This document shows, piece by piece, positions 50,701-59,082 of a stretch of DNA of 64,000 nt. A model generated the notes under the pieces. It searched no databases. It was given only the letters and a program-made list of their open reading frames with translations, and had not been told where the DNA came from. The first letter of the stretch is position 1. Every line of letters begins with the position of its first letter. The stretch is from contig LSRY02000020.1 of NCBI GenBank assembly GCA_001643675.2, positions 62,001 to 126,000 on the forward strand, in the 5' to 3' direction. The position numbers were made by a program, and so were the translations under genes. The DNA is from Monocercomonoides exilis PA203. Its lineage: Eukaryota > Protista > Preaxostyla.

Positions 50701-50859
50701 AAAAGAAGATAAAAATATTAATTTGTATTGAGAACATTCAAATATAAAAGAAATTTGTTTTCCATTTAAATCAAACTGTTATATTTATCAGTAATAGTAA
50801 TTTTTATCAAAATTTTTTTCGCAATAACTTTGTTAATTTCTGGTGGAAAACCAAAAAAT

Positions 50860-50933
50860 TGTCACGATCCGGGATCGAACCGGAGACCTCATGCGTGTGA
50901 AGCATATGTGATAACCAACTACACCATCGTGAC
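50860..50933 (-). tRNA. tRNA-Val(CAC)
   Basis: Reverse complement GTCACGATGGTGTAGTTGGTTATCACATATGCTT-CAC-ACGCATGAGGTCTCCGGTTCGATCCCGGATCGTGACA; acceptor stem, D arm, anticodon arm and TTCGA T-loop all pair. Confidence 0.95.
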
Positions 50934-50940
50934 ATGTCTA

Positions 50941-52595
50941 GTCGGGGAGTTAACCCGCTCAGGGGAGTTAACCCGCTCAGATGATCACAGAAGTCAGAAC
51001 ATTTTTCCTTTTACAGTTTTCATTTTTCTCTTCGAAAACAAACAAAAATCGTTGGTTGTAACATTATAGCAGAATGTTTGTGGAAAAAATCTAATAAAGG
51101 ATGAAAAATAATTAAGAGAGGATAAAAAAATTGAAAAACTTTATCATATTCCAATATCAGACAAATCATCAGAACTGAGCCAAATTTTCCCAGATATTGC
51201 TCCTTCCGGTGCCCTGTTTGATGATGAAGCAATTTCTGCCCATTCTGGAGGCTTCTCTGGCAGTTGAGCAAGAACAGCATCTGGATTTAATGGATGAAGG
51301 CCTGTCACTCTCCAGCTGGCTTTAATTGTAGATGGAAACGAAGCCATTGCAATTGCTTCCTTTAAAACGGAAATAAATTCTTTTCTTCTTTCGCTAGCCG
51401 TGTTTGTTTTCCCACATTCAGTTGACTTTTTGAAACATTTTTTCATGTTGGCAAAAATGTACTGATCGTTGGGTTGCAGCAAGTGAGAGGTATGCGAGGG
51501 GAGTTGGATAAGATCGATTAAATTATCTTTGCATAATTTTACGATCTCTGTGGAAAAATGCCCTGTTCCTCCATCCATCACCAAAGCCGCGTGATTGTGT
51601 TGTAGTCCTATGGCAATTCGCTTTTTGTTTATGCTCGGAAGGATTGCTTTTTGAAATGTATCCAGAAAGCATGCAGTTGTCATGTGTCCAGTTGAACATG
51701 GTATGAATACCTCATTTTCTGTTGTAGCTTCAACATATTCTTTTGGAATTGTCGAATATGGGATAAGAATTGGAGTTAAATATCTCACTCCATCTGCGCT
51801 TGTGAGAAAAACAATACACGTTGAATTTGGCAACGAAGGCTCTGGAATGATTGGCTGAACTGAAGAAGAAGACGGAACCACGACATCTTCTGAAGATTTT
51901 GAAAATACAGTTGATGTTTCATCCAAATTGAACAACAATTGAGGTGCAATTTTCACTTCGGAAAAGAACTTTGCAACTTTGTCAAAAAAGGGACCTATAG
52001 TTTGCTTCGAATTATGTGCAGCACGGCCTATTGGTAACTTTGTTGCTTTTTTCAGAGCAAGTTTCGGATATCTTTCAATAAATCTCCTTGGCCAGTGTTT
52101 GTCTACTGATTTGACTTCTTCTTCTTCAGTTCTTTTTTCTCTTCTAATTTCATTTGCCTACAAATAATTAAAAATTAAAAATACAATAATTCGAATGCTA
52201 ACAAACCATTTCCGCAATATCTCTCATTGAATGGAAAATTCCTTTCTCTGCATCGACTTCCAATCTGACAATTAACCTTTGTTCGTCTGTTTTTGAAAAA
52301 AGAAAAGGTCTCCCGGGTTTTCCAACAACGCGATTCTCCTTTTGAGCTTTTTCTGCTCTTTTTAGAGAATGTCTGGAAATAATACTTGCTTGTTCAATTT
52401 CCGCCTTTTTGAATCCGCAAACAAGATGCAAGTGAAGACCTTTCTCGTGAGGAGTTTCCAGAAGCCTCGCTTCGCTGGATGCTGCAATTCTGTGGATCTC
52501 TTGCTCAATCTTTGACATTTTTTTCCAAACAAAAAATGGGTTGATTTTTGATCATCTGAGCGGGTTAACTCCCCTGAGCGGGTTAACTCCCCAAC
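50941..52595 (-). mobile_element. Full-length pogo-type (IS630/Tc1/mariner group) DNA transposon, 1655 bp
   Basis: ~46-bp TIRs, each with two tandem copies of GGGGAGTTAACCCGCTCA; flanked by TA at 50939-50940 and 52596-52597. Confidence 0.93.
51144..52518 (-). CDS. Pogo-type DDE_1 transposase, DD35D, one intron (52158-52206)
   Basis: HTH-like N-terminus (KPGRP, HWPRRFIERYP), NLDETS, VMDG, LPSHTSHLLQPND with 35 residues between the 2nd and 3rd D; spliced frame is open. Confidence 0.9.
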
Positions 52596-52910
52596 TATCA
52601 AAAAAGAATTTTTTGTTTAAATATAAATAATATAATTTGTCGCATCCATTGATATTATTGAAGAAAATTTTTAACAAAATTGAAAAACTTTAAAGCAGAG
52701 TGGAAAATTCGAACGACTTCAAGTTCTCTTAAACTTGACAATGATCAATAAAAGTCAAATGATATTATTGTTGTTGAAATATAAATGATATTAAATAATG
52801 TTCATTATTTTTTATCTATTTTCCAATTTATTTTTGTGCTTCTTTTTGAATAATTGAAAATTTTTTATGTGAAAAGAATTCTTTAAGTTAATTTATTTCA
52901 TATATGTGAC

Positions 52911-57110: not shown

Positions 57111-59082
57111 ATCTTCATCTTTATTTCAGCTCACACTTTTGTTTTTAAAATGGATATGATGAAACTTATCATTAAAATACAAAATCTGGATTAAATTACA
57201 AACAACCTTTGAATAATTAACACTGCGAAAAAATTTATGATTTCAAAAATAATCAGACATATTTCCTTTAAAAGCACACTGTTTTTAAATTATTTGGAAT
57301 CTTCTTTTATAATTTCGTGTTTTTGCAAATTTAATGAAGAATGATAAAAATAGAATTCACTTTTTTCATTTCACTTTTTGAATTTCAAAAACATGGTGGC
57401 AAATATGGACTTTCAAGCTTTTTTTGAACAAAGAAAGAAAATTTTGTTTCACTTATAACATTATTAAACTTTCTCAGATTTCAAAAAAATTATGATTTTA
57501 ATAACTGTAAACAAACATCATTGATGTGATCACAAAATGTTTTGTAATCTCACATGTATTTTATACAATAAACCCATTTTTTAAACATATTTCCAGATCA
57601 CAAAAAGCGTATCAGAAGTGCATAATTTTTTCTTAGAAAATGCTTGCGGCTAAATATTTTGTCACATTTGTGTGATGATTTTTGAATAATTGTTTTCTCT
57701 TACAAAAATTTCTGTTTTATTATTCACTTTATATATCGAAAAACATACGCTGAAAAGTTGCAACTCTTTTTTAAAAATATATTTTTCTTGAGCATAATTT
57801 CGAACATCTTCATTTGAAACAATTGTAATGTTTTTTTCTTTTGTATGAATAAACTGTCTCCAAAGATATCAAGTCTGTGAAGAATCAACACTCCAACAAA
57901 AGTTACGATTTCTAAAATAATCACCTCGTCTCGTGAAATTTAATAAGTTCTAATGAAATTTTGATGAAAATGAATATTTTCATTTTCACCGGAAATTTTT
58001 ACGAAAGGATATTTCAAAAAATTATATTTTGGAAATTTGGTACTTTTTTTTTTTTTTCACTTTTTAATATTCAATTTGATAAGTTTGAAAATTGGTTTTC
58101 ATAATTTTTGTAATTAATTATGAAAAAAAACATTTTTAATGAAAAATATAAACAAATTTGAATGTTTGAAATCATAACATTCAGAAATGTCGAATCCCTA
58201 AAAATATAACATTGTTGAAATAAGTCGTATTTGGTTTTTTCATTTCGTTATGCATTATTTTTTTTTTAATATTTTTTATAAGTTACACCAATAATTATTC
58301 AAAGTCGAAATTTTTCATTCGAAGTCGAAAAAGTTTCAATCAAAATAGAAATTTTAATAATCAAGAACATATGTTTCCCAATGAAAAATCAATTGAAGAA
58401 AAATATTGTTCTTTTGTTTTTGTGAATATTATTGGCAATGTTTGTGTTGTTGTTTTCTACTAATTTTGAAGAATTCGAACAAAAATAAAGTCTGAAACAA
58501 ACTCCAAACAAAATTCAAGACATTTGTTTTTTTCAATAAGAAATAAGTTTTTTGTAATGAAAAAACACGAAATGAGAAAGCCAATACTGTATTCATCATT
58601 CTTCAAAAAATAAGTGAAAAAACAATATTTTTCTTTCGCAAATTTTCTGTGAAAAAGAATGCTTTCAATTGAAAATAGATAAAAATATGTTAGAATTCAT
58701 ATCATGTTTTGAATTTGCAATTGTTCAAAAAGAATAACAAAAATATTACAGAAAAGAGATAAAAATTCATTAAAATAGCAAACATCATTGATATTTCAAT
58801 AATTTAATTGTTTTTTGACTTTTATTGATTTTTGTCAACTTTTTGAAAATTTGAAGTTTTTCGAATTTTCGATTTTGCTTGAAAGTTTTTCGAATTTGAA
58901 TTATTCTTGGTGTGTTATTCTGAAATTAAGATTAAACCGGAAATACATTAACAATATGAACTTAATGTGTTTCATATGTATTGTAGGAAAAATGAAAAAA
59001 AAATTACTTTTTTGTTAAAAATTTTTTACACAAAAAAATGTAATTATGAGAAAAGATCATAAGTGAACATTAAATATTTCTA

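What the first reader, a model, noticed from the sequence alone, without database searches (positions are those of the whole stretch)
50860..52597. Intact DD35D pogo transposon inserted 5-7 bp upstream of a tRNA gene: possible Pol III-targeted DNA transposon
Seen: the 5' end of tRNA-Val(CAC) is at 50933, the TA target at 50939-50940 and the TIR starts at 50941; the transposase frame and TIRs are intact and co-oriented with the tRNA. Known: upstream-of-tRNA targeting is established for retroelements (Ty3, Ty1, Dictyostelium TRE5), and Dada DNA transposons insert within small-RNA genes. I know of no such targeting for pogo-type elements. Inference: insertion near the Pol III start site, leaving the A/B boxes intact, may reflect safe-harbour targeting. 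This is a single example.
Basis: partly seen in the sequence, partly recalled or inferred. Interest (0 to 1): 0.8.

Follow-up and report, generated by a model that had tools for sequence, protein, structure and literature searches.

The report
Pogo transposon homing to tRNA starts
An intact cut-and-paste "pogo" jumping gene of the protist Monocercomonoides exilis sits 6-7 bases in front of a tRNA gene, and its relatives sit at the same spot in front of a dozen other tRNA genes, a precise homing habit that the papers I could search report only for retrotransposons such as yeast Ty3.

Summary
A 1,655-bp pogo (DDE_1, DD35D) element lies at 50941-52595 with 47-bp inverted ends and a TA duplication. 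It starts 8 bp upstream of an intact tRNA-Val(CAC) whose first base is 50933.

It is not a single case. The genome is Monocercomonoides exilis (82,301,135 bp in 101 contigs). Four of about 18 copies carrying this end sequence abut four different tRNA genes (Val, Pro, Ile, Thr), with the TA 4-8 bp upstream (P below 2e-11). Most other copies lie in end-to-end transposon stacks, four of them traced to a tRNA gene.

For the wider clade, 14 ends are followed by a tRNA B box at gene distance, against 0 in the control.

TA is rare in the window used and common further upstream, so position decides the site, not TA supply.

A PIF/Harbinger family uses the same spot. No copy lies near the 47 5S genes or the U6 gene found.

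Best reading: integration is aimed at the tRNA transcription start region, probably through the Pol III initiation complex. That last step is inferred.

Earlier agents of this scan reported the same habit on other contigs of this genome. I found no published report.

The parts
50853..50858 (-). T6 run, the Pol III terminator of the tRNA gene
   Evidence: Read directly from the sequence. It begins two bases after the discriminator base at 50860.
50860..50933 (-). tRNA-Val(CAC) gene, intact, with A box and B box. Mature 5' end at 50933.
   Evidence: Rfam RF00005 at 60.5 bits, E 9.9e-13, full model 1-71. ARAGORN. Cloverleaf fold.
50934..50938 (-). 5-bp spacer (positions -5 to -1) left between the tRNA and the target TA
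   Evidence: Sequence.
50939..50940 (.). TA target-site duplication, copy next to the tRNA. On the tRNA strand these are positions -7 and -6.
   Evidence: Sequence. TA flanks both ends in 8 of 9 full-length family copies.
50941..50987 (+). 47-bp terminal inverted repeat at the transposase 3' side. It holds two tandem 18-mers (50944-50961 and 50962-50979), presumed transposase binding sites.
51144..52157 (-). Transposase exon 2: 337 codons plus stop. It holds a weak HTH_Tnp_Tc5 match, the DDE_1 catalytic domain (DD35D) and a conserved C-terminal tail.
   Evidence: DDE_1 at E 2.6e-12. Open frame of 337 aa without stops. HTH_Tnp_Tc5 at E 0.012, below the cut-off. Tail conserved across the clade.
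52158..52206 (-). 49-nt intron (GTTTGT...TAG)
   Evidence: The exon 1 frame stops two codons into it and the exon 2 frame opens at its AG. Length and position are conserved in family copies and across the clade.
52207..52518 (-). Transposase exon 1: 104 codons from the ATG. Presumed N-terminal DNA-binding part.
   Evidence: ORF. Intact in 8 of 9 full-length copies. No Pfam family above the cut-off.
52549..52595 (-). 47-bp terminal inverted repeat at the transposase 5' side, with 18-mers at 52557-52574 and 52575-52592
52596..52597 (.). TA target-site duplication, distal copy
   Evidence: Sequence.
52598..52663 (-). The tRNA gene's original upstream region, pushed 1.66 kb away by the insertion. 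It carries the A-run, T-run and TATA-like stretch typical of empty tRNA genes in this genome.
   Evidence: Removing the element and one TA gives A6-TTC-T6-GA-TA-GACAT then the tRNA. This fits the consensus of 45 unoccupied tRNA upstream regions. The stretch is unique in the genome.

Best explanation
This is an intact, probably still mobile cut-and-paste pogo transposon of Monocercomonoides exilis, and its clade aims integration at the start of tRNA genes.

Shown: the element has the parts needed to move. These are a two-exon DD35D transposase, 47-bp inverted ends each with two 18-bp repeats, and a TA duplication. It inserted into a TA 6-7 bp upstream of the mature 5' end of tRNA-Val. That split the gene's native upstream region (TATA-like stretch, A-run, T-run) from the gene body and left the gene itself intact.

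Shown: independent insertions of this family and its clade use a TA at -10 to -4 of many different tRNA genes, in either orientation. [quoted passage not shown] Later elements, pogo or PIF/Harbinger, can therefore enter the same site and push older ones outward, which builds end-to-end stacks.

Inferred: the cue is not a DNA sequence. I think it is the Pol III initiation complex, or the DNA it bends or opens at the start site: TFIIIB placed by TFIIIC on the A and B boxes. The transpososome would be tethered to it, as Ty3 integrase is. A candidate contact is the conserved C-terminal tail of the transposase.

I put about 0.9 on real position-specific targeting and about 0.55 on the Pol III-complex tether.
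For: - Anatomy.
- Independent events in this end-sequence group: Val at -7/-6 (window), Thr at -7/-6 (L032), Pro at -8/-7 (L040), Ile at -5/-4 (L041). The chance of 4 or more of 18 in a 7-bp window is 2e-11 even if the genome held 3,339 tRNA genes.
- Clade-wide: 54 exact ends in the genome, control 0. Fourteen are followed by a B box at tRNA distance, control 0. Thirteen are followed by a tRNA D-arm pattern. One more end with a variant sequence abuts tRNA-Leu (L116).
- From the tRNA side: of the 63 best-scoring tRNA genes, 13-15 have a transposon end 4-13 bp upstream, and 4 of these belong to this clade.
- Position rather than TA supply: in 45 empty upstream regions the window -10 to -4 holds 0.27 TA per gene, against 4.0 at -48 to -25. 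Only 10 of 45 have any TA in the window.
- No shared sequence: the spacers between TA and tRNA differ, as do the tRNA bodies.
- Convergence: a PIF/Harbinger family (DDE_Tnp_4) with unrelated ends occupies the same position at 5 of the 63 tRNAs.
- Stacks joined end to end.
- Age order: all 3 family copies that abut a tRNA have both exons intact, against 1 of 6 displaced copies (Fisher p 0.048).
Against: - No experiment and no polymorphic empty site. The distal flank is unique, so there is no paralogous empty copy.
- The Pol III start site of M. exilis is not mapped. 'At the start site' rests on a conserved CAAnAA at -6 to -1 and on analogy with plants, which I recall from memory.
- None of the 47 5S genes found nor the single U6 gene has a copy nearby, although Ty3 and TRE5-A do use such genes. 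This is weak evidence: P is 0.046 for the 5S genes at the tRNA occupancy rate, and tandem arrays are homogenised.
- The only distant pogo family I saw (D, 31-32% identity) also lies in the stacks. I therefore cannot say where in the pogo tree the habit began.
Confidence: 0.7

Rival explanations
1. The transposase itself reads the DNA. It would recognise a sequence or shape feature common to tRNA genes or their upstream region, such as the A box at +8 to +19 or the junction between the T-run and CAA. It would then cut the nearest TA without any host protein.
For: Empty tRNA genes share a conserved upstream layout: A-run at -21 to -16, T-run at -14 to -7, CAAnAA at -6 to -1. The A box lies at a nearly fixed 12-18 bp from the TA used. 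The 18-mer contains a loosely B-box-like GGTTAACTCC, read directly. No copy lies near the 5S or U6 genes found, which lack tRNA-type sequence.
Against: In stacks the upstream side of the target is another transposon's end, not the native T-run, yet the site is used again. A PIF/Harbinger transposase with unrelated ends and fold picks the same position, which is easier to explain by a shared host cue. The spacers and tRNA bodies differ widely.
Confidence: 0.2
2. Integration is random at TA. Only copies that happened to land just upstream of tRNA genes survive, either through purifying selection in a gene-dense genome or because Pol III factors on the ends block re-excision.
For: The genome is gene-dense, with 62.6% coding on the complete chromosomes (PMC8767320). 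After insertion the two 18-mers of the end lie where TFIIIB would sit, which is my inference.
Against: Selection cannot give a 7-bp window. Sites at -11 to -60 would disturb the promoter no more, hold about 20 times more TA, and are not used. The genome tolerates dispersed repeats elsewhere, for example a roughly 200-bp repeat with at least 40 scattered copies. A random landing in the window has probability of at most 3e-4.
Confidence: 0.05
3. The elements seek other transposons' ends or transposon islands (nesting or local hopping). The link with tRNA genes is second-hand, seeded by another family.
For: Most copies are flanked by other transposon ends.
Against: In the window the distal flank is native tRNA upstream DNA, not a transposon. 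In four cases of this end-sequence group nothing lies between the element and the tRNA. Stack members are joined end to end rather than nested inside one another.
Confidence: 0.04

Closest known systems
Ty3 LTR retrotransposon of Saccharomyces cerevisiae
   Same: [quoted passage not shown] Both use a DDE-type RNase-H-fold enzyme for strand transfer, which I state from general knowledge.
   Different: Ty3 is a copy-and-paste retroelement with an integrase. This is a 1.66-kb cut-and-paste pogo with inverted ends and a TA duplication. Ty3's dependence on TFIIIB and TFIIIC is shown experimentally; here it is only inferred. No use of 5S or U6 genes was seen here.
Dictyostelium TRE5-A (non-LTR) and DGLT-A retrotransposons
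   Same: Both are a safe-haven strategy at tRNA genes in a compact protist genome. TRE5-A ORF1 binds TFIIIB subunits (PMC5911963).
   Different: TRE5 inserts about 44-54 bp upstream in a fixed, opposite orientation by target-primed reverse transcription. Here the distance is 4-10 bp, both orientations occur, and the mechanism is DNA cut-and-paste.
Dada DNA transposons
   Same: Dada elements are DDE DNA transposons associated with tRNA and snRNA genes (PMC3706591).
   Different: Dada inserts inside the gene at a family-specific sequence, makes 6-7 bp duplications, and each family uses one tRNA species. Its transposase is related to MuDR, hAT and P. Here the insertion is upstream, the gene stays whole, many tRNA species are used, the duplication is TA, and the transposase is pogo.
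Pogo superfamily, DD35D groups (Passer, Fot/Fot-like)
   Same: It shares the DDE_1 domain, DD35D spacing, TA duplication, inverted ends and an HTH_Tnp_Tc5-like N-terminal region (PMC7386202).
   Different: Two large pogo surveys do not mention tRNA at all. The closest proteins outside M. exilis in a library of 1.84 billion representatives are at most 36% identical. I did not place the clade in a pogo tree.

Membership tests
pogo superfamily (IS630-Tc1-mariner group) | DDE_1 (PF03184) catalytic domain | tested here: met
   47.1 bits against a cut-off of 22, E 2.6e-12.
pogo superfamily (IS630-Tc1-mariner group) | DDD triad with family-typical spacing (DD35D in Passer and Fot-like) | tested here: met
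   The three D residues lie in NLDETS, VMDGG and QPNDQ, with 35 residues between the second and third. The triad columns are kept in nearly all aligned clade members. Spacing ranges are from PMC7386202.
pogo superfamily (IS630-Tc1-mariner group) | TA target-site duplication and terminal inverted repeats | tested here: met
   TA lies on both sides here and in 8 of 9 full-length copies. The 47-bp ends match at 46 of 47 bases.
pogo superfamily (IS630-Tc1-mariner group) | N-terminal CENP-B-type, psq or Tc5 helix-turn-helix DNA-binding domains | tested here: inconclusive
   HTH_Tnp_Tc5 scores 16 bits against a cut-off of 22.2, E 0.012, at the start of exon 2. Nothing credible was found in exon 1.
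Pol III-gene-targeted mobile elements (Ty3-like behaviour) | Independent insertions at a fixed short distance upstream of many different tRNA genes | tested here: met
   TA lies at -10 to -4 at Val, Pro, Ile, Thr, Gln, Glu, Asp and Leu genes and others. Control 0. P at most 2e-11.
Pol III-gene-targeted mobile elements (Ty3-like behaviour) | Use of other Pol III genes (5S rRNA, U6) | tested here: not met
   No pogo match or clade end lies near the 47 5S genes or the single U6 gene found. The test is weak because the arrays are homogenised and P is 0.046.
Pol III-gene-targeted mobile elements (Ty3-like behaviour) | Dependence on TFIIIB or TFIIIC, or on a transcription-competent promoter | not testable with these tools
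   This needs an integration assay with B-box mutants and interaction tests.
Dada superfamily | Insertion inside the small-RNA gene at a specific sequence, with a 6-7 bp duplication | tested here: not met
   The insertion is upstream, the gene is whole and the duplication is TA. The Dada definition is from PMC3706591.

The most novel reading that the evidence does not exclude
In M. exilis, small cut-and-paste transposases of at least two unrelated superfamilies (pogo and PIF/Harbinger) have independently evolved tethering to the Pol III initiation complex at tRNA genes. They would be the first DNA-transposon counterparts of Ty3. For pogo, the address label would be a short conserved C-terminal tail that could in principle be moved to another protein.
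Probability: 0.45. Interest if true: 0.9.

Novelty: new variant of a known kind. Interest (0 to 1): 0.8.

Why it matters
Homing to the few bases in front of tRNA genes is the textbook safe-haven strategy of retrotransposons in compact genomes such as yeast and Dictyostelium. The review of the field that I read treats it only for retrotransposons (PMC5911963). The one known DNA-transposon link to tRNA genes, Dada, works differently, by sequence-specific insertion inside the gene.

A pogo clade, joined at the same site by a PIF/Harbinger family, shows that DDE cut-and-paste enzymes can reach the same solution. That makes the question of what marks a Pol III start site for an integrating enzyme testable with a 441-codon transposase and 47-bp ends. 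This system is far simpler than a retroviral-type particle.

It also matters for M. exilis itself. About a fifth of the sampled tRNA genes carry a transposon at their start. This explains the end-to-end transposon stacks and gives a first view of the tRNA upstream promoter layout in an oxymonad. A small transposase that docks at a harmless multicopy site is also of interest as a model for safe-harbour gene delivery.

Tried and rejected
I did not fetch those places by another route. The internal negative control is therefore missing.
- A paralogous empty site for this tRNA-Val: none. The first 66 bp of the distal flank are unique and a dispersed roughly 200-bp repeat follows.
- Rfam at gathering threshold on 17 loci missed the window's tRNA-Val and the intron-bearing tRNA-Ile. 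Both were recovered by ARAGORN and by a small-region Rfam search.
- A whole-genome tRNA count: the tool scored only 63 of about 3,339 rough candidates. I used 3,339 as an upper bound. A mark-recapture guess gives about 200.
- An 85-nt unit with a T7 run next to a family-B copy (L039): not a tRNA by ARAGORN or Rfam, and its fold is unremarkable. It has 17 dispersed copies and remains unresolved.
- Pfam on exon 1: nothing credible.
The two exons were searched apart by reference.
- The big word-indexed protein search was not used, because the family was already clear.
- The idea that the B-box-like core of the end sequence drives targeting was considered and set aside. The Harbinger family has unrelated ends and uses the same site.
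- My first regular expression for clade ends found nothing because of a spacing error. It was corrected.

Full report
**What is there**

The window is G000:C15:62001-126000. The assembly has 82,301,135 bases in 101 contigs. That is exactly the size of the Oxford Nanopore assembly of Monocercomonoides exilis PA203 (PMC8767320). The closest database proteins are annotated as Monocercomonoides exilis. One is KAH7818844.1, 97% identical to our exon 2, on a contig of 978,991 bp, the same length as contig C37.

- A tRNA-Val(CAC) gene lies on the minus strand at 50860-50933 (Rfam 60.5 bits; ARAGORN; cloverleaf). It is followed by a T6 terminator.
- Five bases upstream of its first base comes a TA (50939-50940), then a 1,655-bp element (50941-52595), then a second TA (52596-52597).
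- Each end of the element is a 47-bp inverted repeat: GTY, two tandem copies of an 18-mer, then GATGATCA. The 18-mer occurs 4 times in the window against 0 in shuffles.

The transposase lies on the minus strand, in the same direction as the tRNA:
- Exon 1 is 52518-52207, a 49-nt GT..AG intron follows at 52206-52158, and exon 2 is 52157-51144.
- Exon 2 carries DDE_1 (E 2.6e-12) and a DD35D triad, which I counted on the translation. It also has a weak HTH_Tnp_Tc5 match below the cut-off.

**Is it a single case?**

No. The 18-mer marks about 17 places in the genome. With the DNA search these resolve into two families that share the end sequence:
- Family A is 82-98% identical to this copy in DNA and has 11 copies, 9 of them full length.
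- Family B is about 66% identical and has 7 copies.

I fetched each place with 3 kb of flank and scanned for tRNA genes. Four copies directly abut the 5' end of a tRNA gene, each of a different species:

| Copy | tRNA | Position of the TA |
|---|---|---|
| Window (C15) | Val | -7/-6 |
| L032 (C11, family B) | Thr | -7/-6 |
| L040 (C47) | Pro | -8/-7 |
| L041 (C50) | Ile, with intron | -5/-4 |

Suppose the genome held 3,339 tRNA genes, which is the tool's rough candidate count. The chance of 4 or more of 18 random insertions in a 7-bp window is then still 2e-11.

Four more copies have a tRNA gene 1-2.4 kb away (L031, L033, L036, L038). The DNA between consists of other transposons. Where I read the joins they are end to end with only a TA between neighbours.
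- In L038 the order is tRNA-Asp, then another pogo family, then family A.
- In L031 the stack on tRNA-Asn has at least five members.

**The wider clade**

- The exon 2 protein finds about 45 copies at 45% identity or more in this genome, and many weaker ones.
- Their ends share GTC-GGGG-6 bases-CCCG. An exact pattern finds 54 such ends against 0 for the reversed control.
- Fourteen ends are followed by TA and then a B box at the distance expected for a tRNA gene, control 0.
- Thirteen ends are followed by a tRNA D-arm pattern.
- One further end with a variant sequence abuts tRNA-Leu(AAG) at -8/-7 (L116).
- The T of the TA lies between -10 and -4 in every case that I could place.
- Orientation is mixed. 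I counted 2 co-directional and 7 divergent, which is not significant.

**From the tRNA side**

I took the 63 best-scoring tRNA genes, chosen without regard to transposons, and read 300 bp upstream of each.
- Thirteen to fifteen of them have a transposon end 4-13 bp upstream.
- Four of these ends belong to this pogo clade.
- Five belong to a family whose full copies encode a DDE_Tnp_4 (PIF/Harbinger) transposase.
- Three belong to an unclassified family, and one to a further family.

The 45 distinct unoccupied upstream regions show a conserved layout:
- a TATA-like stretch around -34 to -30;
- an A-run at -21 to -16;
- a T-run at -14 to -7;
- CAAnAA at -6 to -1.

Removing our element and one TA rebuilds just such a site, with the A-run and T-run now found at 52598-52615. 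This supports a simple insertion into a normal tRNA promoter region.

**Position, not TA supply**

- In the empty sites TA is scarce where the insertions are: 0.27 per gene at -10 to -4. Only 10 of 45 genes have a TA there.
- TA is plentiful further upstream: 4.0 per gene at -48 to -25.
- A transposase that merely liked TA in AT-rich DNA would land further upstream.
- Few tRNA genes offer a usable TA, and each insertion re-creates the TA at the same distance. Repeated use of the same genes, and hence stacks, follows naturally. This last step is my inference.

**Activity**

- Four family A copies have both exons open: C15, C7, C47 and C50.
- All three copies that abut a tRNA are among them. Only one of the six displaced copies is intact (Fisher p 0.048).
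- This fits the stack model, in which the element nearest the tRNA is the youngest.
- Copies are 92-99% identical within subgroups.
- The intron position and a C-terminal tail are conserved across the clade. The tail runs LPxxPPxWA ... APEG ... G-x-h-Y-x-SSDD-LSD. Both features are also present in a distant pogo family at 31% identity.

**Mechanism**

The following are shown:
- precise, repeated, independent integration at -10 to -4 of many tRNA species;
- a TA duplication at each insertion;
- both orientations;
- the tRNA gene left whole;
- the native upstream elements displaced.

The cue is inferred. The spacers and tRNA bodies share no sequence. In stacks the upstream side of the target is foreign DNA. 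An unrelated Harbinger transposase picks the same spot. A host feature of active tRNA genes is therefore the most economical cue. The obvious candidate is TFIIIB, or the Pol III open complex at the start site, as for Ty3. I put about 0.55 on this step.

Direct reading of a DNA feature such as the A box gets about 0.2. Selection or retention alone cannot explain a 7-bp window.

One point cuts against a general Pol III cue. No pogo match or clade end lies near the 47 5S genes or the single U6 gene found. The test is weak, because P is 0.046 and the arrays are homogenised.

**Comparison and novelty**

- Ty3 integrates 0-20 bp upstream of tRNA genes.
- TRE5 integrates 44-54 bp upstream in a fixed orientation.
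- Dada DNA transposons insert inside tRNA and snRNA genes at family-specific sequences, with 6-7 bp duplications.
- The review of Pol III targeting treats retrotransposons only.
- Two pogo surveys and the M. exilis assembly paper never mention tRNA.
- Five full-text searches found no report of a cut-and-paste element homing upstream of tRNA genes. The library lacks most subscription journals, so absence there is not proof.
- Outside M. exilis, the best representatives whose source I looked up are at most 36% identical and come from short metagenomic or sequencing-run contigs.

Earlier agents of this scan reported the same habit on other contigs of this genome (s1-466278, s1-471025, s1-468300, s1-468371). 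I re-tested it independently for this family. One of those notes describes a fixed orientation. My counts for this clade show both orientations.

**Limits**

- There is no complete tRNA census, no mapped start site and no experiment.

Noticed in passing
L039:6299-6383 (G000:C41:746380-746464): An 85-nt unit ending in a T7 run starts 6 bp after the TA of a family-B pogo end, where a tRNA would be expected. ARAGORN and Rfam do not recognise it, and its fold is unremarkable. It has 17 dispersed copies at 80-91% identity. It may be an unknown Pol III gene or a SINE-like element.
   Followed up: partly
window 52664-52880 and window 58712-58898: A roughly 200-bp repeat with at least 40 dispersed copies at 72-79% identity begins 66 bp upstream of the original tRNA-Val site. 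A second copy lies 6 kb away in the window. It shows no obvious tie to tRNA genes.
   Followed up: partly
L051-L110 (300 bp upstream of 60 tRNA genes): M. exilis tRNA genes share a conserved upstream layout: a TATA-like stretch at -34 to -30, an A-run at -21 to -16, a T-run at -14 to -7 and CAAnAA at -6 to -1. I found no description of it in the papers I read.
   Followed up: partly
L068/L069, L082/L083, L070/L071, L077/L078, L103/L104, L108/L109, L063/L064, L058/L059: Many tRNA genes come in pairs with near-identical 60-bp upstream sequence. Often they are inverted and 0.7-20 kb apart, some with the same transposon end in both arms. This points to widespread palindromic or segmental duplication around tRNA genes.
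   Followed up: no
G000:C44:650656-651449: A roughly 690-bp non-autonomous element with clade-type ends is flanked on both sides, in mirror orientation, by the same intron-bearing tRNA-like gene at the same 7-bp spacer. It looks like a palindrome centred on the transposon.
   Followed up: no
L063, L064, L076 (upstream of three tRNA genes): A third, unclassified transposon family, whose end reads ...CCCGGGTATTTGACACGC followed by TA, also sits 6-8 bp upstream of tRNA genes.
   Followed up: no
L037:4668-7020; L036:4655-5626; L070, L071, L077, L078, L086: A family with GAACTTGATTGATTTGAC ends encodes a split DDE_Tnp_4 (PIF/Harbinger) transposase and has short non-autonomous derivatives. Its ends lie at -7/-6 of five of the 63 sampled tRNA genes. 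I could not settle whether its duplication is TA or TAA.
   Followed up: partly
G000:C15:1360580-1435538: The same contig carries two facing arrays of 5S rRNA genes, at least 42 copies with a period of about 1.3-1.8 kb, in opposite orientation. No unit is long enough to hold a 1.65-kb pogo copy.
   Followed up: partly
window 51147-51330 (C-terminal 60 residues of the transposase): A tail beyond the catalytic domain is conserved from this family to a pogo family at only 31% identity. It contains LPxxPPxWA, APEG, then G-x-h-Y-x-SSDD-LSD. It is a candidate protein-contact motif and is untested.
   Followed up: partly
L117:2945-3030 (G000:C8:100995-101080): Next to another clade end lies a tRNA-like sequence with a D-arm, a T-arm and a T-run that ARAGORN does not call. 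It is probably a decayed or rearranged tRNA gene.
   Followed up: no
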